Notes under the pieces: generated by a model
Databases searched by the model: none
The model's input: the letters and a program-made list of their open reading frames with translations, nothing else
What the model was told of the DNA's origin: nothing
Position numbers and translations under genes: made by a program
Shown here: positions 4,582 to 59,030 of the stretch, piece by piece
Position numbering within the stretch: position 1 is the stretch's first letter
Layout: each line of letters begins with the position of its first letter
IMG/VR virus record: IMGVR_UViG_3300008110_000030
Span: 1 to 64,000 of that record
Reading direction: 5' to 3' (one strand)
DNA: 64,000 bases

Positions 4582-4588
4582 ATAAAAC

Positions 4589-4663: not shown

Positions 4664-4667
4664 ATAT

Positions 4668-4743
4668 TGGTATCGCGGACGGGAATCGAACCCGCCTAGT
4701 CACCTTGAAAGGGTGATGACCTAACCCAGAAGTCCACCGCGAT
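4668..4743 (-). tRNA. tRNA-Glu(TTC), second divergent copy
   Basis: TCACC-CTTTCAA-GGTGA, CCA. Confidence 0.9.
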
Positions 4744-9087: not shown

Positions 9088-9088
9088 G

Positions 9089-9382
9089 TTATTTTGACAA
9101 AGGACTGCCTACTTCTAAATTCCCATCGCCTCGTTCTAAACCATTTATTTGACGTATTACATCCATAATTAGATGTTTATACTTTTGTGTAGGACCTTCA
9201 AGTTCTTTAATTTTGGAATCCCAGTAGTCTCTTTTTTCTGGGATCTCCATATCTCGAACACAATTGTTAGCATACACCAAATATTCTTGACAATATATTT
9301 CACGTTGTGCTTCGTACTTTTCTTTTAAAGAAACAAGCTCTTCTGGACTAAGGGTGTCTAAATCTACTCCATGATCAATCAT
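9089..9382 (-). CDS. Hypothetical coiled-coil protein
   Basis: ORF packed within the operon. Confidence 0.65.
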   Translation of the reverse strand: MIDHGVDLDTLSPEELVSLKEKYEAQREIYCQEYLVYANNCVRDMEIPEKRDYWDSKIKELEGPTQKYKHLIMDVIRQINGLERGDGNLEVGSPLSK

Positions 9383-41499: not shown

Positions 41500-41934
41500 A
41501 TGAATCAACTAAGAACTATAGATGCAGATACACTAACAAAAGCTCTAATTGGATTTGACACAATGTTTGACCAATTTGAACGTAGGTTTTCTAATTCAAT
41601 GAGTAATACATATCCTCCTCATAATGTTATCAAAATTGATGACAACAATTATGAGATTCAAGTGGCTGTAACTGGTTTTGGAAAAGATGATGTTACTGTT
41701 GAACTTGATCAGAACGTGTTAATTGTGACTGCTGGTAGAGATGTTGTTGAAGATGAAAAAACATATCTACACCGTGGACTTGCACAACGCAATTTTGTTC
41801 GCAACTTCCCACTTGCTGAGCATATTGAGGTTAAAGGTGCAGAACAAAAGAACGGCATCTTGTCTATTAGACTAGAGCGCATTGTTCCAGAAGCACTCAA
41901 GCCACGTCGAATTAACGTCACGTATTCAGAGTAA
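41500..41934 (+). CDS. Small heat shock protein (Hsp20/IbpA-like)
   Basis: YPPHNV, YLHRGLAQRNF.R.F.L, NGILSI.L. Confidence 0.92.
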   Translation: MNQLRTIDADTLTKALIGFDTMFDQFERRFSNSMSNTYPPHNVIKIDDNNYEIQVAVTGFGKDDVTVELDQNVLIVTAGRDVVEDEKTYLHRGLAQRNFVRNFPLAEHIEVKGAEQKNGILSIRLERIVPEALKPRRINVTYSE

Positions 41935-42311: not shown

Positions 42312-42857
42312 ATGAGTTTACGAGAAATTACTAAAGATTTACATCACGAAGCAGAAATAACAAAATTTGCCAAGTTATTGCTAAGTGGAAAAATTGAAAA
42401 ATCTGATTATAAGAATTATCTATATAATCTAATGGCAGTATACGATCCAATCGAGTGGTACTGCAAACGTCAAGGTTTCCTTGACACAATGCCTACACTG
42501 CCAAGACTACATGCTATCCATGCAGACTTTGTAGAATTAGATGATGGCACATATTGTTATCTAACGCCAGCGGCTTTAGAATATCAAGCATACTTACATA
42601 AACTAGGCAATGATCCAGAACGTAAACATTTGGTTAAGGCGCATTTATATTGCCGCCATATGGGCGACCTATTCGGTGGTCAAATCATTAAGAAACAAGT
42701 AGCACACATTTCAAGTGGTAAATTTTACGACTTTGAAAATGCTGATGCTATGAAGATGTCTATTCGAGAAACACTCACAGATGATCTAGGAGATGAAGCT
42801 CGTGTGGCATTTGAATTTGCTATTAAGATGATGCGTGACTTATATGCAGGAGAGTAA
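42312..42857 (+). CDS. hemO: Heme oxygenase
   Basis: LRE.T...H..AE (axial His); AHLYCRHMGDLFGGQII. Confidence 0.9.
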   Translation: MSLREITKDLHHEAEITKFAKLLLSGKIEKSDYKNYLYNLMAVYDPIEWYCKRQGFLDTMPTLPRLHAIHADFVELDDGTYCYLTPAALEYQAYLHKLGNDPERKHLVKAHLYCRHMGDLFGGQIIKKQVAHISSGKFYDFENADAMKMSIRETLTDDLGDEARVAFEFAIKMMRDLYAGE

Positions 42858-43533
42858 AGTATGGGACACACTAATTGAGATCCAAGCTCTACTTGAGGAG
42901 TCGTTTGAAAAAACAGGAGTCGAAGTATTCGAACCTGGAATGGATCGTTTTAATCAACCTGGTTGGGTTAATCGTGTATGGTCTAGTGATAAGTATCGCC
43001 GGGCCCACGTTGATGTCGTTGATGCTAGGCTGACCAAAGGTCTTTGGATGATGCACTGTTGCATCTTCCCTCATACACACAATCCAGCACCAATTTACGG
43101 CTTTGATGTTATTGCTGGTAAGAACAAAATTACTGGTTGTTTCCACGACTATAGTCCTGCTGGCGACAAAAATCATCCTATGATAGAATGGTTTGGTCAA
43201 GAAGTTAGCAAGTTAGAGTGGCGCAGAGAACGAGCACTTCCTGATTGGGCTCAGCGTATTTTTACCAAGCACATGGTGGCGGCAGGCAATGTTCAAGATG
43301 AAACTGAGTTACAACAAATTACAGATCTTGCTAAAACTACAGTAGAACACTATCTCAGTACTGTTGCAGAAACTAATAATACAGTGCCTGATACTACATT
43401 TGAGCAAGACTACTACGCACAAAATCAAAAACAAAACCCACATACTCCTAGAGTTATGGTTAGTTTAGGGCTTTCAGAGGACGATGTCAAGCATTTCATA
43501 CAAGAATGTCTATTTCCCGAAATTGGTAAATAA
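42844..43533 (+). CDS. pcyX: Ferredoxin-dependent bilin reductase, PcyA/PcyX type
   Basis: RAHVDVVDAR..KGLWMMHCCIFP...PIYGFDVIAG..KITGCFHDYSP; LPDWAQRIF; QKQNPHT. Confidence 0.8.
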   Translation: MQESKVWDTLIEIQALLEESFEKTGVEVFEPGMDRFNQPGWVNRVWSSDKYRRAHVDVVDARLTKGLWMMHCCIFPHTHNPAPIYGFDVIAGKNKITGCFHDYSPAGDKNHPMIEWFGQEVSKLEWRRERALPDWAQRIFTKHMVAAGNVQDETELQQITDLAKTTVEHYLSTVAETNNTVPDTTFEQDYYAQNQKQNPHTPRVMVSLGLSEDDVKHFIQECLFPEIGK

Positions 43534-45315: not shown

Positions 45316-45390
45316 GTATTAATTTACTAAGCATTTAATTTATCGCTCTACTACCGTTAAATAATAATGACGGTAATCGGAGAGCGAGCA

Positions 45391-45936
45391 ATGAAAAAAC
45401 AAATGTATGCCTTTATGCTATTGGCATGGGTAAGTGCTATTCATTCGGCACCATTGAATGACTTTCAATTTAAAAGTCCTGCATTCAATGGAGTTGGTTA
45501 TAGTTCACATGTACTAACCATAGAAAATCAAGAACGTACACGTCAAAACGAACGTGCAGATAAACTACAGGCTGAAATTGACAAAGCAATTTCAGATAAG
45601 AAAAACACGAATCTTGCTAAGTTTGTTAGTAACTTAGAATCGCGTATCTACGCACAGATTAGCCAAAACGTAGCAACTGCTATGTTTGCCAATAATAATT
45701 GTACAGCAAGTAGCAACACAAACTGTTCAGGGAATATTGATTTCCAAGGAAACTATATTAGTTGGAGCAAGGTATTAAGCTCTGATGATTCAAACTGTTC
45801 TACAGCATATGGTTCTTGCATCATGTTGAGAATAGCAGATCCTACAGCAACGAACCCAACAACAGCACCTTGTAATTCTGATGGTGTATCTTGTATCTAT
45901 GTGCCACTAAGTTCATTCCAAATGCCAGGGAATTAA
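45391..45936 (+). CDS. csgF: Curli assembly protein CsgF-like
   Basis: Signal peptide then FQFKSPAFNG; F...LESRIYAQISQ; adjacent to csgG. Confidence 0.75.
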   Translation: MKKQMYAFMLLAWVSAIHSAPLNDFQFKSPAFNGVGYSSHVLTIENQERTRQNERADKLQAEIDKAISDKKNTNLAKFVSNLESRIYAQISQNVATAMFANNNCTASSNTNCSGNIDFQGNYISWSKVLSSDDSNCSTAYGSCIMLRIADPTATNPTTAPCNSDGVSCIYVPLSSFQMPGN

Positions 45937-45939
45937 CCC

Positions 45940-47190
45940 ATGAAAAAGACTATTATATCTTTGGCAATCGTAAGTATGCTTTCTGGCTGTGCAATTTTGC
46001 AGTCAACAGGAGAGTTTGATAAAACTCCAGAACTGACTACTCAGATGAAAGGTGTTAAGAAAGAGTTTGACACCATTCCAAGTCCATCAGCTGGTAGACC
46101 ATTAAGTGTTGCTGTATACAGTTTTACTGATAAAACGGGTCAACGTAGACCACAGGCTAATATTGCCAGTTTAAGTTCAGCAGTTACACAAGGCGCAGAA
46201 TCTTTTCTAATTCAAGCACTACAAAATGTAGGTCAAGGACAATGGTTTGATGTTGTAGAAAGAGTAGGCATTGATAACCTGACTAAAGAACGATTAATTA
46301 TTCGCCAGATGCGTGAAGCATACGAAGGTAAAGATGCTAAACCATTACTACCAATGCAGTTTGCAGGCATTATTATTGAAGGCGGCATTGTAGGCTATGA
46401 CTCTAGCACAACTAGTGGTGGTGTTGGACAACGTATTTTTGGTATTGGAAAACAAACACAATGGTCCACTGATAGGGTTACCGTAAGTTTACGAGCAGTT
46501 AGCGTAAACACTGGCAAAGTATTAGCCACAGTGACTACTCAAAAGACTATAATGAGTTCAGCAGACAGTGTGTCTGCATTAAAATTCTTTGATGCTGGAA
46601 CACAGGCGTTTGAAGCTGAGGCAGGTTTAACCATAAACGAGCCAGGTACATACGCTGTAAAGGCAACAATTGAAATGGCAGTAGTTGAATTAATTAAAGA
46701 AGGACAACGCAAGGGAGTATGGGATTACAAGACAGTGGTTAAAGAATCACCACCTGTATCAATCGCACCACCCCCACAGGCAGCTCCAGTGATTAGCAGT
46801 GAAGTAAGACAGAAAGAAGAAATTAAAGTAGAGGAGAAGAAAGATGTCGTGGTTCAATCACAAACCCAATCCGAAACGAAAACAGAAGCCGCACCCAGTG
46901 CCTCCACAGAAGTAAAAAAAGAGACACTTAAGGACGGTGCAGAACTAAAAGTAACAGCAATGCAAACTGGGGTAAAACCAACAATAGATCTTTTTGGTGC
47001 TAGGTATTTAAAAGAAGATTCATTTGTATATAAAGAAGCAAACGAAAAAAGTCAGCGAACTTGGCTATTAAAGAAAGGCACTGAATTATACATTATTACT
47101 CCAGGACCAGAAGGTTGGCACCAAGTAAGAGACGCAGAGAAGCGTAAAGGTTTTGTCAAGAATTCAGTACTCGGAACTGACAAACCATAA
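45940..47190 (+). CDS. csgG: Curli secretion channel CsgG with C-terminal extension
   Basis: Lipobox LSGC; AVYSF.DKTGQ; SAVTQGA; WFDVVER.G..NL..ER.IIR. Confidence 0.92.
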   Translation: MKKTIISLAIVSMLSGCAILQSTGEFDKTPELTTQMKGVKKEFDTIPSPSAGRPLSVAVYSFTDKTGQRRPQANIASLSSAVTQGAESFLIQALQNVGQGQWFDVVERVGIDNLTKERLIIRQMREAYEGKDAKPLLPMQFAGIIIEGGIVGYDSSTTSGGVGQRIFGIGKQTQWSTDRVTVSLRAVSVNTGKVLATVTTQKTIMSSADSVSALKFFDAGTQAFEAEAGLTINEPGTYAVKATIEMAVVELIKEGQRKGVWDYKTVVKESPPVSIAPPPQAAPVISSEVRQKEEIKVEEKKDVVVQSQTQSETKTEAAPSASTEVKKETLKDGAELKVTAMQTGVKPTIDLFGARYLKEDSFVYKEANEKSQRTWLLKKGTELYIITPGPEGWHQVRDAEKRKGFVKNSVLGTDKP

Positions 47191-47288
47191 AGATAGCGAG
47201 TACGGAGGAACGTAGAGGTAAACTTAATTTAATGGCCGTAGGCCAAGGAGCGTGGTTGGAGAATATATAATCCAATCGTGTATAAAAG

Positions 47289-48263
47289 ATGGACAAAAGA
47301 AACAAAGGCGTTGGTAAGTTGTCGAGAAAATTACTTACAATTCTGGTGTTGTCTGGAATGGCAACATTGGGTCATGCGGCTGATAACAGCATCTACATTG
47401 ATCAAGCAGGTGACAACAGCACAATTACTATGACACAAGATGGTGCTGGTAATAAAGTAAAAGGCATTTTGTCAAGCGGTGTTGCTGGAGGTACTACAGA
47501 TCCTGCTAAACTTACTGGCAATGCTCAAACAGTTAACATTGAGCAAACTGGTGCAACCAACGTCTTGGCATTGGGAGTTAATTCAACGCAAGGTGGTTTA
47601 GTACAAGGATATGCTAACATAGGTGTGAATTTAAACTATCAAGTAAGTGGTGGTGGAAACACTGGTTATATTAACATTAATAACAATGGTCAAGGAACTG
47701 CAATTGGTAATGTGGTCAGTATTATACAAAGTGGTGGCGGTGGAACAGCAACACTTAACATGACTGGAACTAGTAATCAATTGACTGTTGGTCAGAGTGG
47801 TGGTGCTAACAATACATTTATAGGCACAATCAATGCTGACGAAACTGTAGCAACTGTAAGTAACACACTAGGTGGTGGTAATACTACAACATTAGACATG
47901 ACTGGAAATAAAGGTCAAGTTAGTGTTACAACAACAGGCACTACAAATACAACAAGCGTGACACAAAGCGCATTTGGATCAACTGGTGCGCAAGTACTAG
48001 TTAACATTGATGGTTCAGGCAATAATACAACTGTTACACAAAGTGGTATGTATGATCACTATGCTAGTCTAAGTGTAGTTGGCAGTGGTAATAACTTTAC
48101 AATAGCACAGTCTGGTGGTTCTGCAACTGGACATTCTGCTACATTGTCTGTAACTGGAAGTACAAACACTGTTGGTATCACACAGCAAGGATCAGTTGCC
48201 AATCTAACCAACATGGCAGTAAATGGTAGTAATAATACATACACTATACTACAGAAAAATTAA
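47289..48263 (+). CDS. Curlin-repeat protein (CsgA/CsgB-like)
   Basis: Signal peptide; many Q-x-G-x-x-N repeats. Confidence 0.8.
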   Translation: MDKRNKGVGKLSRKLLTILVLSGMATLGHAADNSIYIDQAGDNSTITMTQDGAGNKVKGILSSGVAGGTTDPAKLTGNAQTVNIEQTGATNVLALGVNSTQGGLVQGYANIGVNLNYQVSGGGNTGYININNNGQGTAIGNVVSIIQSGGGGTATLNMTGTSNQLTVGQSGGANNTFIGTINADETVATVSNTLGGGNTTTLDMTGNKGQVSVTTTGTTNTTSVTQSAFGSTGAQVLVNIDGSGNNTTVTQSGMYDHYASLSVVGSGNNFTIAQSGGSATGHSATLSVTGSTNTVGITQQGSVANLTNMAVNGSNNTYTILQKN

Positions 48264-48272
48264 GAGGTTGGA

Positions 48273-49379
48273 ATGAACGTATGGCTAGCAATATTACTTG
48301 TTTCGTTACTGCACACATCAAATGCTCAAGCGGCAATTGGTAAAGTAACGGAACAGGTAAACATACCTCCTACAATTCAACGAGATAAATCAACCCTAAC
48401 TGGCAGCAAAGGTACAGGTGTTGAGATGAATGACTCAATTAAAACTTCTCAAGGCAAAGTGGGCATTACCTTTGAAGATGATACCCGTGTACAAGTAAAC
48501 GAAAACAGTAAACTGGTTATTGATGACTTTGTTTATGATCCAAAAACCAAAGCAGGTAAACTAGGTGCTAAGATTGCACTAGGTACTGTACGCTATGCTA
48601 GTGGACAGATTGCTAAGAATAGTCCACAGAGTGTAAACCTTAATACACCTAGTGCTACTGTAGCAGTTCGTGGTACGGACTTTACAGCCACAGTAGACGA
48701 ACTTGGTGAGAGTACAATTATTCTACTACCTAGTTGTCCTAACGATAGACCTACACGTACAGTAAAAGACATTGAAGCAAGTTGTAAAACTGGTGTAATT
48801 GAAGTCAGCAATGACGTGGGCACTGTAATATTAAATCAACCGTTCCAAGTAACTAAAGTACAGAGCAGAACACAACCTCCTACTCCACCTAAAACACTGG
48901 AGTTATCTGAAATGGCTATCAGTAACTTGATAATTTTGAGTCCTCCAAAAGAAGTTAAGCAAGCTCAAGAAGAACAGCGTAAAGTGTTTAATCCTTTAGA
49001 CATAGATTTTCTAAAAGAAAAAGGATTAGAGAACTGGCTTGATATGCAAGCTGGAGTTATCTACGAAGACAAACTAAAGAAAAACTTTTTGGATAACGAT
49101 TTCCTAGCCAGCTTATTTGACATTATTGGTAATCAATTGGATCAAAAATTCTTAGACCCAGTAGATCCTGTACTACCTGACTACAAGAGAGCTACTGGTA
49201 TCGTTGCCTACAAAGATGATACGAGTATTGAATTGTGTAGAGATAGTGGTGCTGACATACAGTGTGTTAAAACTCCTTTAACACAGAACAGTACAATCTT
49301 CCAAACACAAGGTAGTTTAGAGTTTAAGAATCGTGTTAATCAAGGCGGTAATACTATCATTACCTTAATACAAAGATGA
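48273..49379 (+). CDS. FecR-domain periplasmic protein
   Basis: ITFEDDTRVQVNENSKLVI; TPSATVAVRGTDF. Confidence 0.85.
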   Translation: MNVWLAILLVSLLHTSNAQAAIGKVTEQVNIPPTIQRDKSTLTGSKGTGVEMNDSIKTSQGKVGITFEDDTRVQVNENSKLVIDDFVYDPKTKAGKLGAKIALGTVRYASGQIAKNSPQSVNLNTPSATVAVRGTDFTATVDELGESTIILLPSCPNDRPTRTVKDIEASCKTGVIEVSNDVGTVILNQPFQVTKVQSRTQPPTPPKTLELSEMAISNLIILSPPKEVKQAQEEQRKVFNPLDIDFLKEKGLENWLDMQAGVIYEDKLKKNFLDNDFLASLFDIIGNQLDQKFLDPVDPVLPDYKRATGIVAYKDDTSIELCRDSGADIQCVKTPLTQNSTIFQTQGSLEFKNRVNQGGNTIITLIQR

Positions 49380-50644
49380 AACGTTTTATTTTAGGATTTG
49401 TAATCTTGTGGTGTGTATGTTTGAGTGCAATTGCTCAAGCCACGTCTTTTACTGATTTAAAATTTGGTCAATATCAGATTGCAGATTCTCAATGGGACGT
49501 TGGGGCATGTTTGTATACAAATACTTGTAATATTTACAGTACTCAACCAGGAACAATGTATCAAATACCTTGGTGGAACGGACAGTGGAACTGGCAATCT
49601 GGTCAGTATGTTAAATTTTTATTAAGTGGAATCTCTGGATATCCTTACACCGCAAATGTTTACAATAGTGACGGCAGTCTAGCAGGTAGTATAGGTAGTG
49701 GTAAAATTATTAACATGGGTGTTGATGCAAATGGTTATGCATTATTTTTCTTTGTAGGGACAGATGATAATACTGGACAACTTTTTAGTACAAATTACGG
49801 ATTTACAGGTACGGGCGGATATTCTTGGACTGGTACATTAAATCCAACAATTTCACAAGTTGACTCATTTTCTGTAAGTTACGGATCAACGACACCATTA
49901 AGTCCTGGTCAAACATTTACTGCTACCAGTTCAACTCCATCTGGACCAACAGTCTCAGGCGGAACTATAACACAGTCTAACGCTCCAAATAATCAAATTA
50001 TAGGCAGTGGAAGTGGTATTGGAATCAGCAACAATCAACAAAGTCGTGTAAACACTTGGAATAACGGTAGCAATCAAAATGCCAATAACTATTTGTATAT
50101 TGATCAAGTAAGTGGTTCCTACAATGACGTAACTATTACACAAACAACTAGTACAGGTAAGAACAAAATAGAAGCGACAATAGGCGGAACTGGAAATAAT
50201 GTTATTAACGCAACACAATCTGGTACTAACTATCTTAAGTTAGATGTCACTGGTAATAACAACAATGTAACAAGTCAACAGTCTAATAATAGTTTGACTA
50301 GCAATTATAAAGAAACTACAGTTAATGGTAATAGTAATATTATTAGTACTAACCAAAAAGACAATTCTAATCACATAATGTTTACCACAGTAACTGGTAA
50401 CAGTAATAGTGTGACAGCAGTACAAGAAGGCACAGGTGGTCACTATTTAGAAAATAAACTTACTGGCAACAATAATAGTGTACTTGCTAATCAGAGCGGA
50501 AATACAAAAAATAACGCCACTATAGATTTAACTAATAATGGCGGAGCCGCCAGTGTTGATTTACAACAATCTGGCGGGAAATCTTTTAGTATTATTCAAA
50601 GTTGTACCAATCCTGCAGGATGTAGTACTGTGGTAAGACAATAA
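49376..50644 (+). CDS. Secreted protein with C-terminal curlin repeats
   Basis: Signal peptide; G-N-x-N / Q repeats from about residue 240. Confidence 0.78.
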   Translation: MKRFILGFVILWCVCLSAIAQATSFTDLKFGQYQIADSQWDVGACLYTNTCNIYSTQPGTMYQIPWWNGQWNWQSGQYVKFLLSGISGYPYTANVYNSDGSLAGSIGSGKIINMGVDANGYALFFFVGTDDNTGQLFSTNYGFTGTGGYSWTGTLNPTISQVDSFSVSYGSTTPLSPGQTFTATSSTPSGPTVSGGTITQSNAPNNQIIGSGSGIGISNNQQSRVNTWNNGSNQNANNYLYIDQVSGSYNDVTITQTTSTGKNKIEATIGGTGNNVINATQSGTNYLKLDVTGNNNNVTSQQSNNSLTSNYKETTVNGNSNIISTNQKDNSNHIMFTTVTGNSNSVTAVQEGTGGHYLENKLTGNNNSVLANQSGNTKNNATIDLTNNGGAASVDLQQSGGKSFSIIQSCTNPAGCSTVVRQ

Positions 50645-51334
50645 TTATACCTTAAATAACCATTTCTTTGTTATGTGTAATCTTGCCTTGTTGTACTGAA
50701 CAGCAGTAATAACTAGAGCAACTGCCCAAGGTACAATAGTAGCGGCCCAAGGAACTAATCCTGCCCACCACGTAGCCATTAATGGTTCTTTCATCAACAT
50801 TAACATAGCCACGGCAAACAAGACAAACGATCCTACAAATACTGTGTCAGGATATTTTTCTAGTATCTTACTAACTAGGCCAGCACCAAACAAAATAATT
50901 GGCACACTGATTAACAAGCCAGCAATTACTAAAACAAAACTTCCATTAGCGGCTGCGGCAATACCTAGTGCGTTGTCTATGCCCATAACAGCATCGGCAA
51001 CTACGATAGTACCAATAGCACCCCAAAAGGTGTCCTTGGCTTCTATGTTATGCTCGTCATGTGTAAATGCTAACTTCCAACCAATCCATAACAATGCAAG
51101 AGCACCTATTGCTCTAAGTCCAGGAATTAGTAATAGGTAAGTTAATGCGGCTACAGATATGAAGCGTATTGCGATGGCACCAAAGGTACCCCAAAAGATT
51201 GCTTTCTTGCGCAAGTGATCTGGTAGTTTATTAGCTGCCATTCCAATAACAAGAGCGTTATCGCCAGCTAATACAATGTCTATCAAAATGATAGCTAAAA
51301 ATGCCCAAAGGGCCTGAAGCGTAAAGAGTTCCAT
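50645..51334 (-). CDS. TerC/Alx family membrane protein (YjbE type)
   Basis: DIVLAGDNALVIGMA; ADAVMGIDNAL; GLLISVPII. Confidence 0.92.
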   Translation of the reverse strand: MELFTLQALWAFLAIILIDIVLAGDNALVIGMAANKLPDHLRKKAIFWGTFGAIAIRFISVAALTYLLLIPGLRAIGALALLWIGWKLAFTHDEHNIEAKDTFWGAIGTIVVADAVMGIDNALGIAAAANGSFVLVIAGLLISVPIILFGAGLVSKILEKYPDTVFVGSFVLFAVAMLMLMKEPLMATWWAGLVPWAATIVPWAVALVITAVQYNKARLHITKKWLFKV

Positions 51335-51348
51335 AATTTACCTTAAAG

Positions 51349-51441
51349 TTATGGTCTCACCTCTTTGTCCATGCACCGGATACTGTTGTATCGTGTTGAC
51401 GGCACATAAAACCAACACCAGTTGGTTAGTTACTCCCCAAA
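51349..51441 (-). promoter_or_regulatory. yybP-ykoY (Mn2+) riboswitch
   Basis: TTTGGGGAGTA...CGTCAACACG...GGTGAGACCAT in the TerC 5' UTR. Confidence 0.82.
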
Positions 51442-51443
51442 GA

Positions 51444-51456
51444 TATTTAGTAAATA
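51444..51456. promoter_or_regulatory. Back-to-back late promoter boxes
   Basis: tatttagtaaata gives TAAATA on both strands. Confidence 0.55.
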
Positions 51457-51460
51457 CAAT

Positions 51461-52006
51461 ATGCGAGCAAAAGAATTCATTATAGAAGCAGAAGCTAGCG
51501 ATGCTGAGTTAACGCAACGTTACGGCAAGTTTGAACCCGAAGATAAACCAATGTTACCAACCACAAGAGTTGGTGGTGCGCCTTCCCCAACTTTATGGAC
51601 AGCCTACGAAGTAATTCGAAATATTTTAGGCAAAGATAAAGTTACAGACGACGATGATGAATTAGCTCCTGGAATGTACTATGTGTATCAAAGCTTAGGC
51701 TCTCCTATGTTTAAAGACACAGGTGATGGAGTAGGTAGTATCAATCTTCCCAACTTAGATAGTACTAGTGCTCGAGATGTTGCCATGGCTGCTCACGAAG
51801 CATACCATGCTTATGTACACAATAAAAGTCTTGGCGGAGTTGCTTATGCCAATGAAAAGATTATTAACAAACTAGCAGAAAAGTGGTTGAGAAATCACTT
51901 GTCAGGACCAGCATTACACACTGCACTAGAAAAAATAGTGGGCAGTAGAATCAGTTATGGTCCAAACCATATGCCTAACAGTTCAACAATAGATAAAAGA
52001 AAATGA
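51461..52006 (+). CDS. Hypothetical protein with HExxH motif
   Basis: Starts MRAKEF; AAHEAYHA. Confidence 0.7.
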   Translation: MRAKEFIIEAEASDAELTQRYGKFEPEDKPMLPTTRVGGAPSPTLWTAYEVIRNILGKDKVTDDDDELAPGMYYVYQSLGSPMFKDTGDGVGSINLPNLDSTSARDVAMAAHEAYHAYVHNKSLGGVAYANEKIINKLAEKWLRNHLSGPALHTALEKIVGSRISYGPNHMPNSSTIDKRK

Positions 52007-52299
52007 TTAAGAAAATCTTATTAATTCTATTGGTCTGCTTACCCAGTCTAGTTAACGCCCAATTCCAATACGATTATCCATTGTTGTGCGACCGCACTGC
52101 AAAGATCATACAAAGTCTCGGGGACGACTGGAAAGAAACGCTGACTTGGAGTGGAAAACACATCAGTGACAACAGTGTCTACAGTCTGTGGACCAATGAA
52201 AAAAATGGATCATGGACCCTATTAAAGATGACTTCAGAAGTTTCGTGTATACTTGGAACGGGTAGCGAATCAAAAGTAAACTTAGGAATGCCTATATAA
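52003..52299 (+). CDS. Small secreted protein
   Basis: Signal peptide, two Cys. Confidence 0.7.
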   Translation: MIKKILLILLVCLPSLVNAQFQYDYPLLCDRTAKIIQSLGDDWKETLTWSGKHISDNSVYSLWTNEKNGSWTLLKMTSEVSCILGTGSESKVNLGMPI

Positions 52300-54341
52300 T
52301 GATTAAGAAAATTTTATTAAGCCCTTGGACTGCTCTATTAACACTGGCGTTAGTAGTGGGCATACGTGCGGCAGACCCCACATTCGTTGAAAGCGTAAGA
52401 CTACGCTACTTTGATACCTTAATTACTGCTAAGGAACCAACATTCAACAATATTGTAACAGTAAATATTGATGAAGCTAGCTTGGACAAGTATGGACAAT
52501 GGCCATTGCCAAGGACTGAATATGCCAAAATTATACGAGATCTATATCAGAGGGGAGCAGGACTTGTTGTACTTAATGTGCTCATGCCAGAGTCAGACCG
52601 TACAGGTGGCGACAGTGCGTTGGGTCAAACTCTAAAAGAATTTCCAGTAGTGCTAGGGTCAGTTCCTAGCAACAAAACAAAAAATACTCCACGTGCCCCA
52701 GGGTCAGCAGTATTAGGCCCAGAGCATTTGGATCAAATTATTCGGTATCCAGGTCTAATTGCCAATGTGCCATTGCTAGAAAATTCGGCGGCAGGAGTTG
52801 GCATAGTTTCAACACTACCTGAAGTAGACGGTGTTAATCGTAGATTACCTCTTATCGTCACTGTTGATGGTAAATTATATCCAAGCATAGCTATGGAAAC
52901 GCTCCGCATTGCGGCTGGCGATAGCACCTTTCAAGTAAAACTATTTGAGGGCGGTGTTGAAAAAATGCGTATACCTAAATTTGGTCCTGTTACTACAGAC
53001 AATTTGGGTCGTATATGGATTGACTGGAGTCAGCAAAATAGAAACTTTAGTTTAACTACATTACCAAAAGATTTAGAAGGTGCAATTGTCATCGTAGGCC
53101 CAACAGCCGCAGGTATTAGTAATCCAGTACCAACAAGTAAAGGGGCAGTATTTCCACACGAAGTACAAGCCGCAGTTATTGGTACAATGGTAAACGGAGT
53201 TGTAATTGAACGTCCTGATTATGCAGATGGCGCAGAGATTATAGCATTATTAGCATTTGGTTTATTATTAATTTTCTTATCGAGGTGGACTTATGTTGGC
53301 ATTTGTGCTACTGTGGTTATTGTTGGTGCCGTCGTTCCTGGTACTATGTACGCTTTCACTAATTGGCTCATCCTATCAGACGCGACTGCAATCACGTTTG
53401 GGCTTATTATCGTTGCTCTTCATACTTATGGCGTTAAGTTTGTAAGCGAGTTCTTACAGAAGCAGGCAATTAAGAAACAATTTGAGGGATATGCAAGTCC
53501 TACAGTAGTTAAACTACTACAAGAAAATCCAGACATCATCAAGAACGGAACTAAACGTGAAGTATCTATAGTGTTTTCAGACCTACGTGGATTTACTCCA
53601 TTAGGTGAAAGTTTTGGTGATGACGTTAAAGGTCTAACTGAAGTTATGAACGGCTACATGGATGCTATTACACAACCTGTACTAGATGCAGATGGTATGA
53701 TTATCAAGTACATTGGTGATGCAAGTATGCATATTCATAATGCACCTATTGATGATCCTGACCATGCTAAGACAGCAGTAGCTACTGGACTTAAAATGTT
53801 GAAAGCTGTTAAAAAGTTCAGCATTGAATTAGAGGCTAAAGGACGTCCAGGAGTCAAGATGGGTGCTGGTATCAATACTGGTTTAGGTTATATTGGCGAG
53901 ATGGGATCAACTCGTCGTCATTCATATGATGTACTAGGTGATGCAGTGTCAACAGCCGCACGTATTGAAAGCAAGTGTAAAGAATATGGATGCGTATTAT
54001 TAGTTGGCGGTGCAACTGTGGAACAATGTGGTGATGATTTCTTCTTCTTAAAAGTAGATGACCTGGCTGTTAAGGGTAAGAGTGTGGGAGTTGCTATCTA
54101 TACAGTATTAGATGATGTTACTGCTGAGTATCATGTGAGTAAAAAGATACATGATGCTATGCATAATGCATATAGATCACAAAAATTTAACATGGCTATC
54201 AGTATGTGCAAACAACTTAGAGATCAGTTTGACAGTAGATTGACTGGTTACTATGACATGTGGATAGAACGTTGCGAGTTCCAATTAACACAAACATTGC
54301 CTGAGGATTGGAACGGCGTGTTTATAGCAACTTCTAAATAA
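52299..54341 (+). CDS. CHASE2-domain class III adenylate/guanylate cyclase
   Basis: V.IDEASL..YGQWP.PR (CHASE2); TM helices; FSDLRGFT, KYIGDA, GINTG, DVLGDAVSTAAR. Confidence 0.92.
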   Translation: MIKKILLSPWTALLTLALVVGIRAADPTFVESVRLRYFDTLITAKEPTFNNIVTVNIDEASLDKYGQWPLPRTEYAKIIRDLYQRGAGLVVLNVLMPESDRTGGDSALGQTLKEFPVVLGSVPSNKTKNTPRAPGSAVLGPEHLDQIIRYPGLIANVPLLENSAAGVGIVSTLPEVDGVNRRLPLIVTVDGKLYPSIAMETLRIAAGDSTFQVKLFEGGVEKMRIPKFGPVTTDNLGRIWIDWSQQNRNFSLTTLPKDLEGAIVIVGPTAAGISNPVPTSKGAVFPHEVQAAVIGTMVNGVVIERPDYADGAEIIALLAFGLLLIFLSRWTYVGICATVVIVGAVVPGTMYAFTNWLILSDATAITFGLIIVALHTYGVKFVSEFLQKQAIKKQFEGYASPTVVKLLQENPDIIKNGTKREVSIVFSDLRGFTPLGESFGDDVKGLTEVMNGYMDAITQPVLDADGMIIKYIGDASMHIHNAPIDDPDHAKTAVATGLKMLKAVKKFSIELEAKGRPGVKMGAGINTGLGYIGEMGSTRRHSYDVLGDAVSTAARIESKCKEYGCVLLVGGATVEQCGDDFFFLKVDDLAVKGKSVGVAIYTVLDDVTAEYHVSKKIHDAMHNAYRSQKFNMAISMCKQLRDQFDSRLTGYYDMWIERCEFQLTQTLPEDWNGVFIATSK

Positions 54342-54743
54342 TTAACCTTCGCCTGCAGCCGCAGTTTTTACATCATCAGGATCAATGTCATCTCTGCGTT
54401 TGATAGTTTTAGGTTGTTCTTTTTTACCGTCATGTGCAACTGCTTCTTGAAATTTTTCAGAAGCTTCACGCTCAACTTTAACACCTTCCATAACACGATC
54501 ACTTTCAATCATCTTACCACGTAGGTGTAACACAGTATTAACTTTTTGGTTTAAACGAATCAAATCGTTGTCCAACATACGGATACGATCTATTAGAGCG
54601 ATAAGAACTGTATTGGCTTCTGAGATGACTGGTTTAACTTCTTTGGTTGACCATTCCCATACATATTTGATAATATAACCCATTCCCACTGCCATGACAA
54701 TGGGAAATCCATATTTGTTTACTAACTCTACTATTTCAGTCAT
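54342..54743 (-). CDS. Membrane-anchored hypothetical protein
   Basis: GFPIVMA...DNDLIRL; resembles the 55216 protein. Confidence 0.7.
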   Translation of the reverse strand: MTEIVELVNKYGFPIVMAVGMGYIIKYVWEWSTKEVKPVISEANTVLIALIDRIRMLDNDLIRLNQKVNTVLHLRGKMIESDRVMEGVKVEREASEKFQEAVAHDGKKEQPKTIKRRDDIDPDDVKTAAAGEG

Positions 54744-55032: not shown

Positions 55033-55219
55033 TTGGTTTATATCCCCTAACAAAAGCTTCTATTGGTTCTATTTTCTGTAATATTTGTTTACCGTTAACA
55101 TTGGTAAACTTAAATAGATCCCCTGCTCGCCAACCCAATTTATCAGAATTAAATTCTTCATCTAATATAATACCGTTAGGTGAACAATCCCAATTATAAT
55201 CAAAGTGTAGCATTATCAA
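55016..55219 (-). CDS. Hypothetical protein
   Basis: Packed ORF. Confidence 0.6.
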   Translation of the reverse strand: MIMLHFDYNWDCSPNGIILDEEFNSDKLGWRAGDLFKFTNVNGKQILQKIEPIEAFVRGYKPNVQEK

Positions 55220-55497
55220 TCCCTTCTTGCATCATTCTTTCCGTCTGCTCGAGCAATACGATCAGCATCCGGACGTAGACCTAGCGCATTAGATACGATA
55301 GTATCAATACGAATAACGTCGTGATTCATTGTTTTAACACGATTATCTAATGCTACGATAATACCTGCCATACCTTTGATACTGCCCAAAACTCCCTGTA
55401 ACAGAAGTTTGATAGTCAAATATACAAAGTACCCGCCCGCAAACGCAACAGCTATAGGGAACCCTAAATCACCAATTAATTTAAAAATTTCGTTCAT
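55216..55497 (-). CDS. Membrane-anchored hypothetical protein
   Basis: GFPIAVA...LDNRV..MNHDVIRID. Confidence 0.7.
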   Translation of the reverse strand: MNEIFKLIGDLGFPIAVAFAGGYFVYLTIKLLLQGVLGSIKGMAGIIVALDNRVKTMNHDVIRIDTIVSNALGLRPDADRIARADGKNDARRD

Positions 55498-55534
55498 AAT
55501 CGCTCCATTTTTTACTATATCCATATTTATGGTG

Positions 55535-55818: not shown

Positions 55819-55893
55819 CTGGCGATAGTTCAACGGATAGAACAGTAGCCTTCTAAGCTATTAATCCAGGTTCGATTCCTGGTCGCCGGACCA
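55819..55893 (+). tRNA. tRNA-Arg(TCT)
   Basis: GTAGC-CTTCTAA-GCTAT, CCA; TAAATA at 55807-55812. Confidence 0.93.
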
Positions 55894-55910: not shown

Positions 55911-56744
55911 ATGAAAATCAATCTAGTCAGCGACATGCACATCAACTTCCAGGACATTAATTTGCCAGGCGGTGATGTACTCATTATGGCTGGGGATATC
56001 ATGGAAGCTGGTCACCTACGTTTGGCTGACAATGCTAAACAAAATACATTTATTGCTGATAGATATCGTAGATTCATCAATGAAGAATTGTGCAAGTATC
56101 GTCATGTGATTTATATTGCAGGCAATCATGAGCACTATAGCAACAGCTATGACGACACACATATTCGAATAGGTCGTGAACTGCCAGACAACGTACACTT
56201 CTTAGAAGCAGAATCAATCAAGATTGATGACGTGTGGTTCTTTGGTGGCACATTTTGGACTGATATGAACAAAGGCGATCCTATCACTGCCAGTGTGCTT
56301 AAACAACGCATGGCTGATTTTAGTGGTTCAATTAAATTTGGTAACAGTATCAAAGTTGATACCGCTTGGGGAGACAGTTATTACACTAGTAAGTTCACTC
56401 CTGCTTATGCTAAAGGCGTGTTTCACGAAACAATGGAAAAATTAAAAACTTTTTTAGAAGCTCATCCTGATGAAAAAGTTGTTGTAGTAAGTCATCACGC
56501 ACCAACTGAGTTGAGTGTTAATGAATATTACAAAAATGAATTTCATATGAATGGTGGATATCACAGCAGACTAGGTGATTTTATTTTAGACCATCCCAAC
56601 ATTAAGGTATGGTGTCATGGTCACATGCACGATCCAGTTGACTACACTATTGGAACTACTCGTGTACTGAGTAACCCACGTGGTTACAAAGGATATGAAC
56701 ACCAAGCTGAAGTGTTTGATCCTAATTTTAGTTTTGACGTATAA
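55911..56744 (+). CDS. Calcineurin-like metallophosphoesterase
   Basis: SDMH, AGD, GNHE, SHHAP, HGHMH. Confidence 0.92.
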   Translation: MKINLVSDMHINFQDINLPGGDVLIMAGDIMEAGHLRLADNAKQNTFIADRYRRFINEELCKYRHVIYIAGNHEHYSNSYDDTHIRIGRELPDNVHFLEAESIKIDDVWFFGGTFWTDMNKGDPITASVLKQRMADFSGSIKFGNSIKVDTAWGDSYYTSKFTPAYAKGVFHETMEKLKTFLEAHPDEKVVVVSHHAPTELSVNEYYKNEFHMNGGYHSRLGDFILDHPNIKVWCHGHMHDPVDYTIGTTRVLSNPRGYKGYEHQAEVFDPNFSFDV

Positions 56745-58798: not shown

Positions 58799-58883
58799 GC
58801 CTGCATGGTGAAATCGGTAAACACAGCAGACTTAAAATCTGCCGGAGAAATCCTTCCCAGTTCGATTCTGGGTGCAGGCACCA
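58799..58883 (+). tRNA. tRNA-Leu(TAA)
   Basis: GCAGA-CTTAAAA-TCTGC, CCA. Confidence 0.93.
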
Positions 58884-58893
58884 AAATACATAG

Positions 58894-58922
58894 TTGACAA
58901 AAATAACAAACACATATATAAT
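58894..58922 (+). promoter_or_regulatory. sigma70 promoter
   Basis: TTGACA-17 nt-TATAAT. Confidence 0.85.
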
Positions 58923-58945
58923 ATAGAACACTTTACAAGGACATT

Positions 58946-59030
58946 GCGACTGTGGTGAAATAGGTAGACACAAGAGACTTAAAATCTCTCGCCCACAGGC
59001 ATCCCGGTTCGATTCCGGGCAGTCGCACCA
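58946..59030 (+). tRNA. tRNA-Leu(TAA), second copy
   Basis: AGAGA-CTTAAAA-TCTCT, CCA. Confidence 0.93.

What the first reader, a model, noticed from the sequence alone, without database searches (positions are those of the whole stretch)
45358..54341. Phage curli secretion operon coupled to a FecR / CHASE2 adenylate cyclase signalling module
Seen: late box, csgF, csgG with a Pro-rich linker and extra C-terminal domain, a curlin protein, a FecR protein, a second curlin-repeat protein, then a CHASE2 cyclase; no csgE. Known: csgF/csgG occur in some T4-like marine phages, and CHASE2 cyclases pair with FecR-type proteins in proteobacteria. Inference: the phage builds an amyloid surface structure on the infected cell, wired to cAMP signalling across the envelope, perhaps for aggregation, grazer defence or superinfection sensing.
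Basis: partly seen in the sequence, partly recalled or inferred. Interest (0 to 1): 0.72.

Follow-up and report, generated by a model that had tools for sequence, protein, structure and literature searches.

The report
Phage curli operon with cAMP sensor
A freshwater giant phage carries a complete-looking kit for secreting curli amyloid fibres joined to a periplasmic sensor that makes cAMP; the same gene kit was already described in marine SAR11 phages in 2020-2022, so this is a new host lineage and habitat for a known but functionally unsolved phage module.

Summary
Window 45.4-54.3 kb encodes, on the + strand, CsgF, a CsgG lipoprotein with a C-terminal linker and SH3-like domain, a secreted curlin-repeat protein, a secreted FecR-domain protein, a second curlin-repeat protein with a foreign N-terminal domain, and a CHASE2 class III adenylate cyclase. 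No CsgE was found.

The kind is not new. The csgF-csgG-curlin-FecR-curlin-cyclase cassette is annotated in Pelagibacter phage HTVC008M and Methylophilales phage Melnitz, and was discussed for pelagiphages in 2020 and 2022.

New here:
- The contig is a freshwater jumbo myophage of the Rak2/PA5oct type, not a T4-like marine phage.
- 286 IMG/VR contigs encode relatives of the cyclase; of the 80 fetched, most that reach far enough upstream keep the gene order.
- The whole cassette also sits in a Caulobacteraceae chromosome.
- FecR-CHASE2 pairs without csg genes occur in several bacterial phyla.

All cassette genes are under purifying selection, and a T4-late-type motif precedes csgF. Fibre formation, cAMP output and the biological purpose remain untested.

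The parts
45358..45390 (+). Late-type promoter-like motif TTAAATAATA, followed by a GGAG Shine-Dalgarno, ahead of csgF
   Evidence: TAAATAAT is 12-fold enriched upstream of genes in this genome, and the related ATAAATAT precedes genes in the structural-gene region of the contig. A TAAATA[CTA]TA motif is conserved about 25-30 nt before the csgF ATG in relatives. HTVC008M and several contigs have an exact TATAAATA.
45391..45936 (+). CsgF homologue (181 aa from ATG 45391; the ORF is open from 45367). Has a signal peptide and the conserved N-terminal motif F-x-F-x-x-P-x-F-x-G.
   Evidence: PF10614 E=7e-7 and phrog_35372 E=1e-41. The N-terminal motif is conserved in 58 homologues. dN/dS 0.10-0.18.
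45940..47190 (+). CsgG outer-membrane channel lipoprotein (lipobox LSGC) with a Pro-rich linker (about residues 270-340) and a C-terminal SH3-like domain (about 345-416)
   Evidence: PF03783 E=3e-46. E. coli CsgG 6LQH E=5.5e-44 over residues 7-268. SH3_4 23.7 bits against a cut-off of 24.1. The extension is present in about 26 of 61 viral copies, all but one (L045) in the window's subclade. It is absent from Melnitz, HTVC008M and the Caulobacteraceae copy.
47289..48263 (+). Curlin-1: a secreted curlin-repeat protein of 324 aa, the likely major fibre subunit
   Evidence: Curlin_rpt E=9e-7. Its profile hits 8C50 at E=4e-17 and CsgA 8ENQ at E=7e-4. Repeat units recur every 23-25 residues. The AF2 model is all-beta with 26 strands, pLDDT 79.9, pTM 0.80. 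Fragments 100% identical to its 5' part occur in 3 riverine metatranscriptome assemblies, but those runs were chosen with this gene.
48273..49379 (+). Secreted FecR-domain protein of 368 aa with no membrane anchor: an N-terminal domain like the cell-surface-signalling domain of anti-sigma factors, a low-confidence linker, and a small C-terminal beta domain
   Evidence: PF04773 E=4e-10 and phrog_37870 E=2e-121. AF2 model pLDDT 73.8; residues about 20-210 match PupR 6OVK and 4M0N at probability 1.0. dN/dS 0.06-0.14.
49376..50644 (+). Curlin-2: a secreted 422-aa protein with an unrelated N-terminal domain (about 23-215) and C-terminal curlin repeats (about 235-400). It is the fastest-evolving cassette gene.
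   Evidence: hhalign to the curlin-1 profile: probability 89%, E=2e-6. Repeat spacing 20-26 residues. 49-62% amino-acid identity to relatives and dN/dS 0.20-0.31. No fold or family was found for the N-terminal domain.
50645..51334 (-). TerC-family membrane protein, an opposite-strand insertion that is not a core cassette part
   Evidence: PF03741 E=4e-40. Present at this place only in the window and its 94%-identical relative L005.
51461..52006 (+). Accessory ORF o194 (about 181 aa) with an invariant HExxH motif; possibly a metallopeptidase. No family assigned.
   Evidence: HEAYH is invariant in 7 homologues. No Pfam, PHROG or NCBIfam family. Present in a subset of related loci at the same position.
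52003..52299 (+). Accessory ORF o98: a small secreted protein with two conserved Cys
   Evidence: Signal peptide. 10 homologues at the same position. No family.
52299..54341 (+). CHASE2 class III adenylate cyclase of 680 aa: TM1, a periplasmic CHASE2 domain, three further TM segments, then a cytoplasmic cyclase domain
   Evidence: CHASE2 E=3e-39 and Guanylate_cyc E=6e-18. Nearest solved structures are Cya2 2W01 and 6FHT. D428, D474, K470, R555 and K592 are invariant in 69 homologues, and D544 is kept in 67. The Lys/Asp pair specifies ATP. The transition-state Asn is Ser in 67 of 69.
54342..54743 (-). Small membrane protein dn133 (phrog_18771): one N-terminal TM segment plus a conserved amphipathic helix. 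Cassette-specific in phages.
   Evidence: In 50,697 phage records, homologues occur only in the 6 cassette-bearing records, always adjacent to the cassette. It lies beside the cyclase in jumbo-phage loci and directly upstream of csgF in Melnitz and HTVC008M. The family is virus-only. dN/dS 0.04-0.09.
55216..55524 (-). Second phrog_18771 paralogue (102 aa), with an ATAAATAT motif 6 nt before its start
   Evidence: phrog_18771 E=1e-29. 31% identity to dn133, E=8e-13. Motif position.

Best explanation
This is a late-expressed, self-contained type VIII (curli) secretion cassette of the CsgE-less, alphaproteobacterial type, carried by a freshwater jumbo myophage that must infect a Gram-negative (diderm) host.

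Steps read from the sequence and by homology (none shown experimentally here):
- After Sec export, the CsgG lipoprotein would form the outer-membrane channel.
- CsgF would dock into the channel through its conserved N-terminal peptide.
- Two secreted curlin-repeat proteins are the substrates. Curlin-1 is a plain repeat protein. Curlin-2 carries a fast-evolving, non-curlin N-terminal domain.

Inferred:
- The substrates polymerise into amyloid-type fibres on the infected cell, and curlin-2 displays its N-terminal domain on them.
- The soluble periplasmic FecR-domain protein and the periplasmic CHASE2 domain of the cyclase form a two-part envelope sensor. Bacteria pair the same two parts with cyclase, histidine-kinase or PP2C outputs. 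The sensor converts a periplasmic or surface cue into cytoplasmic cAMP.
- The most likely purpose is to change the surface of the infected cell late in infection. Options are adhesion or aggregation with neighbouring hosts, and masking of receptors on the cell and its debris.
- The cAMP branch reports secretion or envelope state, and may act on timing through the two cassette-specific small membrane proteins.
For: - All parts have the right targeting signals: signal peptides on CsgF, both curlins, FecR and o98; a lipobox on CsgG; and a 1+3 TM topology that puts CHASE2 outside and the cyclase domain inside.
- CsgG is a close homologue of the solved E. coli channel. Curlin-1 hits solved curli subunits, and curlin-2 shares its repeats.
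- Lack of CsgE is normal for alphaproteobacterial curli operons (PMC3521004).
- The gene order is kept in most of the 80 fetched loci that extend far enough upstream, out of 286 viral contigs with a cyclase relative. It is also kept in HTVC008M and Melnitz.
- All cassette genes have dN/dS of 0.04-0.31.
- The cyclase metal, substrate and phosphate residues are conserved in all or nearly all of 69 homologues.
- The FecR N-terminal domain matches the PupR and 4M0N cell-surface-signalling domain at probability 1.0.
- FecR lies next to CHASE2 proteins in many bacteria that have no csg genes (PMC5192318, PMC5498481).
- In S. meliloti, CHASE2 cyclases act downstream of an outer-membrane protein, and loss of CHASE2 makes CyaD1 constitutive (PMC7529298, PMC5498481).
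- A conserved late-type promoter motif precedes csgF.
- Marine versions are reported as expressed in metatranscriptomes (PMC9599517).
Against: - No fibres, secretion or cAMP have been measured for any phage copy.
- Buchholz et al. saw no clumping of Melnitz-infected cells by flow cytometry or TEM (PMC9004378).
- The residues aligned with the E. coli CsgG constriction (Y51/N55/F56) differ: YPASNF reads QANIASL.
- The cyclase family has Ser in place of the transition-state Asn, which may lower activity.
- The FecR-CHASE2 complex prediction gave no verdict.
- No cNMP-binding protein was found on the 214 kb held, so the receiver of cAMP is unknown.
- The RNA evidence for this window is weak and selection-biased.
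- Foldseek gave no significant match for the curlin model.
Confidence: 0.55

Rival explanations
1. The CsgG-CsgF pore has been repurposed as a gated outer-membrane pore or pinholin-like device that times lysis, not as a fibre exporter (the proposal of Buchholz et al. 2022). On this view the cyclase and the small membrane proteins would be part of a lysis clock.
For: - A late-type promoter motif precedes csgF.
- Two cassette-specific small TM proteins travel with it, and one has a weak N-terminal match to a holin PHROG (E=7e-5 over 22 residues).
- The CsgG constriction residues are altered.
- No clumping was seen in Melnitz infections (PMC9004378).
Against: - Two secreted curlin-repeat substrates are conserved under purifying selection in nearly all copies. 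A pure pore function would not need them, and Buchholz et al. wrote that csgA/csgB were missing.
- An outer-membrane pore cannot depolarise the inner membrane.
- The same six genes sit in a Caulobacteraceae chromosome that has no phage lysis context.
Confidence: 0.12
2. The cassette is mainly a sensory device. The FecR-CHASE2 cyclase is the functional core and raises cAMP to reprogram host metabolism through the host CRP. The curli genes are a co-transferred bacterial operon neighbour with little role in infection.
For: - FecR-CHASE2 pairs are widespread in bacteria without csg genes.
- The cyclase and FecR are the most conserved cassette genes (dN/dS 0.05-0.06 against L005).
- Some fetched viral contig fragments show the cyclase with no csg genes in the stretch held.
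Against: - The csg genes are also under purifying selection and keep their order across phage lineages that share little else.
- Wittmers et al. report podophage cassettes with csgF, csgG, curlin and FecR but often without the cyclase (PMC9599517). That makes the csg genes, not the cyclase, the constant part.
- No phage-encoded cAMP receiver was found.
Confidence: 0.13
3. The CsgG channel is used as an ungated import or export route for small molecules or cofactors (one of the alternatives raised by Zaragoza-Solas 2020 and Wittmers 2022).
For: There is no CsgE gate. FecR family members are historically linked to iron-citrate signalling (PMC9599517).
Against: - The conserved curlin substrates and CsgF are unexplained by this model.
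- The FecR domain here lacks the anti-sigma and TM parts of true FecR, so an iron link is unsupported.
- CsgE is absent from all alphaproteobacterial curli systems anyway (PMC3521004).
Confidence: 0.05

Closest known systems
Viral T8SS (curli) cassette of pelagiphages: Pelagibacter phage HTVC008M, Methylophilales phage Melnitz, and uncultured pelagimyophages and HTVC023P-type podophages (PMC7029224, PMC9004378, PMC9599517)
   Same: The genes and their order are the same: csgF, csgG, curlin, FecR, second curlin, CHASE2 cyclase, plus the small phrog_18771 protein. Amino-acid identity to Melnitz and HTVC008M is 31-52% by tblastn and 25-52% across both phages. There is no CsgE. A T4-late-type motif precedes csgF.
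   Different: - The carrier is a freshwater jumbo myophage of about 350 kb of the Rak2/PA5oct type, not a Kyanoviridae phage or a podophage.
- CsgG has an added linker and SH3-like domain.
- TerC, o194 and o98 are inserted between curlin-2 and the cyclase.
- The phrog_18771 genes lie after the cyclase on the opposite strand, not before csgF.
E. coli/Salmonella curli system (csgBAC-csgDEFG)
   Same: A CsgG channel homologue (E=5.5e-44 to 6LQH), a CsgF with the N-terminal docking motif, and curlin-repeat substrates that hit CsgA 8ENQ.
   Different: There is no CsgE, CsgC or CsgD. The constriction-loop residues differ. The curlins are longer, with more repeats. The cassette is a single unit with FecR and a cyclase. 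Control appears to be by a phage late-type promoter.
Caulobacteraceae chromosomal cassette (MAG contigs L094 and L096)
   Same: csgF, csgG, two secreted curlin-repeat genes, FecR and a CHASE2 cyclase in the same order. 38-44% identity by tblastn for csgG, FecR and the cyclase, and about 30% for csgF. The cyclase lies in the same clade as the viral ones.
   Different: - It is flanked by bacterial housekeeping genes, and its GC (52%) is close to that of its flanks.
- It has no phrog_18771 gene and no CsgG extension.
- It was found in only 2 of 201 Caulobacteraceae genomes and 1 of 8 alphaproteobacterial csgF loci sampled.
Bacterial FecR-domain protein + CHASE2 sensor pairs: S. meliloti CyaD1/SMc02177 with outer-membrane NsrA; Burkholderia and P. 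aeruginosa LysM-FecR + CHASE2 histidine kinase; Pelagibacter CHASE2-PP2C + FecR
   Same: A secreted FecR-domain protein is encoded beside a membrane sensor with a periplasmic CHASE2 domain. In S. meliloti the output is cAMP and an outer-membrane protein acts upstream (PMC5498481, PMC7529298, PMC5192318).
   Different: Those loci have no csg genes. The outputs vary (cyclase, kinase, phosphatase). The bacterial FecR proteins have other added domains (LysM, or long C-terminal regions). The ligand is unknown in every case.
FecA-FecR-FecI / PupB-PupR cell-surface signalling
   Same: The N-terminal half of the phage FecR model matches the periplasmic signalling domain of PupR, which binds an outer-membrane transducer.
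   Different: There is no transmembrane helix, no cytoplasmic anti-sigma domain, and no TonB-dependent transducer or ECF sigma factor in the cassette. It is not an anti-sigma factor.

Membership tests
Curli / type VIII secretion system | CsgG-family outer-membrane lipoprotein channel | tested here: met
   PF03783 E=3e-46. E. coli CsgG 6LQH E=5.5e-44 over residues 7-268. Lipobox LSGC.
Curli / type VIII secretion system | CsgF accessory protein with an N-terminal CsgG-docking peptide | tested here: met
   PF10614 at 29.9 bits, above the 25.8 cut-off. F-x-F-x-x-P-x-F-x-G is conserved in 58 homologues. phmmer found no match to solved CsgF.
Curli / type VIII secretion system | Secreted curlin-repeat subunit(s), the CsgA/CsgB class | tested here: met
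   Curlin_rpt at 29.2 bits, above the 20.7 cut-off. The profile hits 8C50 at E=4e-17 and CsgA 8ENQ at E=7e-4. The second protein aligns to the first. Both have signal peptides.
Curli / type VIII secretion system | CsgE periplasmic specificity factor or gate | tested here: not met
   No PF10627 match on the 214 kb contig. CsgE is also absent from all alphaproteobacterial curli operons (PMC3521004), so it is not defining outside the Gammaproteobacteria.
Curli / type VIII secretion system | Formation of extracellular amyloid fibres (Congo red/ThT binding, SDS-insoluble) | not testable with these tools
   This needs expression and microscopy. The AF2 model of curlin-1 is a confident all-beta repeat, but Foldseek gave no significant match.
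Viral T8SS-FecR-cyclase cassette (Wittmers et al. 2022) | Gene order csgF-csgG-curlin-FecR-(curlin)-adenylate cyclase in a phage genome | tested here: met
   The window's cyclase lies inside the clade that holds HTVC008M and Melnitz.
Viral T8SS-FecR-cyclase cassette (Wittmers et al. 2022) | A small gene, called 'histidine kinase' in the paper, next to the cassette, sometimes in two copies | tested here: inconclusive
   Two phrog_18771 paralogues flank the cassette, and their homologues precede csgF in Melnitz and HTVC008M. Pfam and NCBIfam find no kinase domain. Identity with the paper's 'HK' is inferred from position only.
Class III adenylate cyclase | Two metal-binding Asp, the Lys/Asp adenine-specifying pair, and the transition-state Asn and Arg | tested here: inconclusive
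   D428, D474, K470, R555 and K592 are invariant, and D544 is kept in 67 of 69. The Asn position is Ser in 67 of 69 homologues (alignment to Cya2). Activity was not measured.
CHASE2 sensor | A periplasmic CHASE2 domain between TM1 and a three-helix TM block | tested here: met
   PF05226 E=3e-39 over residues 15-323. Hydrophobic segments at 2-30 and 308-382.
FecR-type anti-sigma factor | N-terminal cytoplasmic anti-sigma domain and a single TM helix, with a periplasmic FecR domain that signals from a TonB-dependent transducer | tested here: not met
   Only the periplasmic domain is present, behind a cleavable signal peptide. There is no TM anchor. It has the FecR domain but is not a FecR anti-sigma factor.
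   The major capsid gene is 69-71% identical in nucleotides to Yersinia fHe-Yen9-04, Serratia BF and Pseudomonas PA5oct-like jumbo phages. The contig is 214.6 kb at an estimated 61% completeness. The sequence is held by lake and freshwater metagenomes.

The most novel reading that the evidence does not exclude
The cassette is a trans-envelope relay built like cell-surface signalling. The soluble FecR-domain protein would couple the periplasmic face of the CsgG channel (in this lineage through the added SH3-like tail) to the CHASE2 domain of the inner-membrane cyclase. Fibre export, contact with a neighbouring cell, or material released by lysed neighbours would then be reported as cAMP. The two virus-only phrog_18771 membrane proteins would use that signal to set the time of lysis. 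That would be a curli-based counterpart of T4 lysis inhibition.
Probability: 0.1. Interest if true: 0.8.

Novelty: new member of a known kind. Interest (0 to 1): 0.45.

Why it matters
Phage-encoded curli systems are widespread in the ocean. Wittmers et al. estimate about 0.1% of assembled viral proteins (PMC9599517). Their function has been an open question since 2020.

This window shows three things:
- The module is not a peculiarity of SAR11 and OM43 phages in the sea. A large clade of freshwater jumbo phages keeps it under purifying selection.
- The whole module exists in a bacterial chromosome.
- The FecR-CHASE2 half is a generic bacterial envelope sensor.

This gives experimenters more tractable entry points than SAR11: a Caulobacteraceae operon, and cassettes that can be expressed in laboratory Gram-negative strains. 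It also corrects two published statements. Phages do not lack the fibre genes, and FecR and the cyclase are not entirely absent from bacterial T8SS operons.

If fibres are made, phages would be remodelling the surface and aggregation state of abundant planktonic bacteria, with consequences for particle formation and phage-host encounter rates.

Tried and rejected
1. Complex prediction of the FecR mature protein with the periplasmic CHASE2 domain: no verdict (score 0.00, folded without alignments). This is not evidence either way.
2. Near-identity DNA searches of the cassette and of 6-24 kb against 50,697 phage records: no match.
3. psbA, as a test for a cyanophage: not found. The cyanophage idea, prompted by Hsp20 and the bilin-reductase homologue, was dropped after the capsid result.
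4. cNMP-binding domain on the contig: none. The contig is only about 61% of the genome.
5. Sigma-70 promoter and terminator scans of 45.0-55.2 kb: not above shuffled expectation.
6. N-terminal domain of curlin-2: no Pfam or PDB sequence match, and Atlas structural neighbours all have TM below 0.5.
7. Foldseek of the curlin-1 model against PDB and Swiss-Prot: only non-significant beta-helix hits. The profile search answered the question instead.
8. Metallophosphoesterase 55911-56744 as a cAMP phosphodiesterase partner: it is unrelated to the phosphoesterase beside the Caulobacteraceae cassette (E=2.1), and it occurs in only 14 of 82 related loci. Rejected.
9. phrog_18771 proteins as histidine kinases: no kinase domain in Pfam or NCBIfam, and Atlas neighbours are virus-only with no family.
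10. RNA evidence: identical 151-213 nt contigs over 47303-47649 in three riverine metatranscriptomes. The runs were chosen with that gene and DNA carry-over cannot be excluded. This is treated as weak.
11. Direction of transfer between bacteria and phages: the basal branch of the csg-linked cyclase clade holds both a phage contig (L095) and the Caulobacteraceae copies. The direction is unresolved.

Full report
**What is in the sequence.** Between 45.4 and 54.3 kb the + strand carries a tight run of ORFs. Pfam assigns them as follows:
- CsgF, 45367-45936
- CsgG, 45940-47190
- a curlin-repeat protein, 47289-48263
- a FecR-domain protein, 48273-49379
- a 422-aa ORF with no family, 49376-50644
- a CHASE2 + class III cyclase protein, 52299-54341

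TerC (50645-51334) is on the minus strand. Two small + strand ORFs lie at about 51461-52006 and 52003-52299.

**Targeting signals and topology.** The translations show cleavable signal peptides on CsgF, both curlin-like proteins, FecR and the 98-aa ORF. CsgG has a lipobox (LSGC). The cyclase has one TM segment before CHASE2 and a block of three after it, which places CHASE2 in the periplasm and the catalytic domain in the cytoplasm.

**CsgG.** CsgG aligns to the solved E. coli channel over residues 7-268 (E=5.5e-44). The constriction-loop residues differ. Residues 270-416 are a Pro/Glu/Lys/Thr-rich linker followed by a domain that matches bacterial SH3 just under threshold.

**The two curlins.**
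- The curlin-1 profile hits solved curli subunits: 8C50 at E=4e-17 and E. coli CsgA at E=7e-4.
- Its AF2 model is a confident all-beta repeat (pTM 0.80).
- The 422-aa ORF is a second curlin. Residues 235-395 align to the curlin-1 repeats, starting at the same N-x-x-Y-I-D-Q-x-G motif. They sit behind an unrelated N-terminal domain of about 190 residues, for which I found no family or fold.

CsgE was not found on the contig. That is normal for alphaproteobacterial curli operons (PMC3521004).

**The 'late box'.** The sequence before csgF is TTAAATAATA, not the exact T4 consensus. But TAAATAAT and ATAAATAT are 12- and 24-fold enriched upstream of genes in this genome. The related ATAAATAT form precedes genes in the structural region of the contig. 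In relatives, a TAAATA[C/T/A]TA motif sits about 25-30 nt before a conserved GGGAGCGAA-ATG, and HTVC008M and several contigs have an exact TATAAATA. The real csgF start in the window is therefore probably ATG 45391. Late expression is a reasonable inference, not a measurement.

**What kind of genome this is.** The window is the first 64 kb of a 214,617-bp linear IMG/VR viral contig that CheckV rates 61% complete.
- Its major capsid gene is 69-71% identical in nucleotides to Yersinia phage fHe-Yen9-04, Serratia phage BF, Erwinia phages and PA5oct-like Pseudomonas phages, all of 286-358 kb. It is a jumbo myophage, not a Kyanoviridae pelagiphage or cyanophage. No psbA was found.
- The cassette sequence is held, at 30-87% of its sampled words, by about twenty lake-water, freshwater and related metagenome runs from at least 14 studies. 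The habitat is fresh water.
- Because the cassette needs Sec, Lol and an outer membrane, the host must be Gram-negative (inference).

**It is already known as a kind.** tblastn finds the cyclase, CsgG, FecR and the small downstream protein in only two cultured phage species, Pelagibacter phage HTVC008M and Methylophilales phage Melnitz. In both, the GenBank records annotate csgF, csgG, curlin, FecR (or a hypothetical protein), a second curlin (or a hypothetical protein) and the cyclase in the same order.

The literature on the cassette is as follows:
- Zaragoza-Solas et al. 2020 reported the curli cluster in pelagimyophages and proposed 'sibling capture' (PMC7029224).
- Buchholz et al. 2022 proposed a lysis-timing pore and saw no clumping (PMC9004378).
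- Wittmers et al. 2022 identified the curlins, FecR and the adenylate cyclase in both myo- and podo-pelagiphages. They reported expression in marine metatranscriptomes and proposed aggregation, superinfection defence or import (PMC9599517).

**What is added here.**

1. *Distribution in viruses.* 286 IMG/VR contigs encode relatives of the cyclase. In the 80 fetched, most that reach far enough upstream keep the order csgF-csgG-curlin-FecR-[variable]-cyclase. Many are 100-364 kb and also share the upstream dnaK-hsp20-bilin-reductase-like genes. The region between FecR and the cyclase is the variable part. It holds curlin-2 variants, o194, o98 and, only in the window and its closest relative, TerC.

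2. *A seventh gene family.* The 133-aa minus-strand gene next to the cyclase and its 102-aa paralogue (both phrog_18771) have homologues in 50,697 phage records only in the six cassette-bearing ones. There they lie directly upstream of csgF. The family is virus-only and has no known domain. By position it is probably the gene Wittmers et al. call a histidine kinase. I found no kinase domain.

3. *Bacterial side.* A scan of one genome per species with a FecR profile gave three classes of hit:
   - Phage contigs binned into MAGs, for example L091 and L095, whose flanks are phage genes.
   - Genuine bacterial loci in which a FecR gene lies within about 1-3 kb of a full-length CHASE2 cyclase with no csg genes, in Alpha- and Deltaproteobacteria, Omnitrophota and Spirochaetota MAGs.
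   - Pelagibacter genomes with an IalB, CHASE2-PP2C, 465-aa, FecR(874 aa) cluster.

   Published loci add a CHASE2 histidine kinase with LysM-FecR in Burkholderia and P. aeruginosa (PMC5192318). They also add S. meliloti CyaD1 with the FecR-domain SMc02177, where an outer-membrane protein, NsrA, acts upstream of the CHASE2 cyclases and deletion of CHASE2 makes the cyclase constitutive (PMC5498481, PMC7529298). FecR-domain protein plus CHASE2 sensor is therefore a generic two-part periplasmic sensor with interchangeable outputs.

4. *A bacterial copy of the whole cassette.* Two Caulobacteraceae MAGs carry csgF, csgG, two secreted curlin-repeat genes, FecR and the CHASE2 cyclase.
   - The cassette sits between methylmalonyl-CoA mutase, acyl-CoA dehydrogenase, DsbA and amidohydrolase genes.
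   - Its GC is 52%, against 55-56% in the L096 flanks and 39% in the phage copy.
   - It is rare: 2 of 201 Caulobacteraceae genomes.
   - Seven other alphaproteobacterial csgF-csgG loci have no FecR or CHASE2 within 10 kb.

   In a cyclase tree, the csg-less bacterial cyclases fall outside and all csg-linked ones form a single clade (support 98). Its basal branch holds the Caulobacteraceae copies together with one phage contig. The two modules were therefore joined once, but the direction of transfer is unresolved.

5. *Selection.* Against three relatives, all cassette genes have dN/dS of 0.04-0.31. Curlin-2 is the fastest, and FecR, the cyclase and dn133 are the slowest against L005. Identities are mosaic along the cassette, which indicates recombination between cassettes.

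6. *The cyclase.* The metal-binding Asps, the adenine-specifying Lys, and the Arg and Lys are invariant in 69 homologues, and the partner Asp is kept in 67. The transition-state Asn is Ser in 67 of 69.

7. *FecR.* The AF2 model (pLDDT 73.8) has an N-terminal beta domain that matches the periplasmic signalling domain of PupR and a Parabacteroides anti-sigma factor at probability 1.0. A low-confidence linker and a small C-terminal beta domain follow. It has no TM helix or anti-sigma domain, so it is not a FecR-type anti-sigma factor.

**How it most likely works.**
- *Shown by sequence:* a complete minimal curli export set with correct targeting signals, plus a periplasmic sensor pair with an apparently competent adenylate cyclase, all conserved and probably expressed late.
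- *Inferred:* fibres of curlin-1 form on the infected cell. Curlin-2 contributes a variable displayed domain. FecR and CHASE2 together sense a periplasmic or surface cue and set cAMP.
- *Not known:* the cue, the cAMP receiver (none was found on the 214 kb), the role of the phrog_18771 proteins, and the benefit to the phage.

I put the fibre-plus-sensor model at 0.55. The pore-for-lysis, sensor-only and import models are weaker. Each leaves the conserved curlins unexplained, or, for the sensor-only model, conflicts with the reported podophage cassettes that lack the cyclase.

**Limits.**
- The complex prediction gave no verdict.
- The RNA evidence for this window is weak and selection-biased.
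- Foldseek did not place the curlin model.
- The contig is incomplete.
- The MAG origin of the bacterial cassette rests on two independent assemblies with the same context.

**Verdict.** This instance is a new member of a known kind, in a new phage lineage and habitat, with some lineage-specific additions: the CsgG SH3-like tail, o194, o98 and the TerC insertion.

Noticed in passing
window 206-4743 (minus strand); 55819-55893; 58799-59030: A dense array of 20 tRNA genes lies at the start of the window. There are three more downstream, including two adjacent tRNA-Leu(taa) copies. This fits a jumbo phage with its own translation support.
   Followed up: no
window 39562-41451, 41500-41934: The phage encodes a DnaK (65-68% amino-acid identity to proteobacterial-type DnaK sequences) and an Hsp20 a few kb upstream of the curli cassette. 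The dnaK-hsp20 ... csgF synteny is kept in many IMG/VR relatives. Cytoplasmic chaperones beside an amyloid-export operon may not be a coincidence.
   Followed up: partly
window 42835-43533: A ferredoxin-dependent bilin reductase homologue (PF05996 E=2e-14) occurs in a phage with no psbA on the 214 kb held. It is conserved upstream of the cassette in many relatives, sometimes in two copies.
   Followed up: partly
window 50645-51334 (minus strand): A TerC-family membrane protein is inserted inside the cassette on the opposite strand. It is there only in the window and its 94%-identical relative L005.
   Followed up: yes
window 51461-52006 and 52003-52299: Two accessory ORFs lie between curlin-2 and the cyclase: one with an invariant HExxH motif (possibly a metallopeptidase) and one small secreted two-Cys protein. 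Both recur at this position in a subset of relatives, and neither has a family.
   Followed up: partly
L102 6022-13286 (Candidatus Pelagibacter ubique HIMB4) and about 13 other Pelagibacter loci: SAR11 genomes have their own cluster of IalB, a CHASE2-SpoIIE(PP2C) sensor phosphatase, a 465-aa protein and an 874-aa FecR-domain protein. The host of the marine cassette-bearing phages thus already has a FecR/CHASE2 sensor that a phage FecR could in principle talk to.
   Followed up: partly
L094 and L096 (Caulobacteraceae MAG contigs), about 7050-13091: The full csgF-csgG-curlin-curlin-FecR-CHASE2 cyclase cassette sits in a bacterial chromosomal context, contrary to the published statement that FecR and the cyclase are not in bacterial T8SS operons.
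   Followed up: yes
window 45391-54743 compared with L005, L017 and L012: Identity is mosaic along the cassette. Against L005 the cyclase is 94% identical but csgF 73% and curlin-2 59%. Against L017 csgF is 82% and the cyclase 72%. This indicates recombination between cassettes of related phages.
   Followed up: partly
L040 10001-15970: In one 149-kb viral contig the csgF-csgG-curlin-FecR block is inverted and placed after the cyclase and the phrog_18771 genes. The two halves of the cassette can therefore be rearranged and still stay adjacent.
   Followed up: no
window about 24000: GC skew and gene orientation switch sign near 24 kb. Genes are on the minus strand from 5.6 to 24.1 kb and on the plus strand after that, marking a divergent module boundary.
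   Followed up: no
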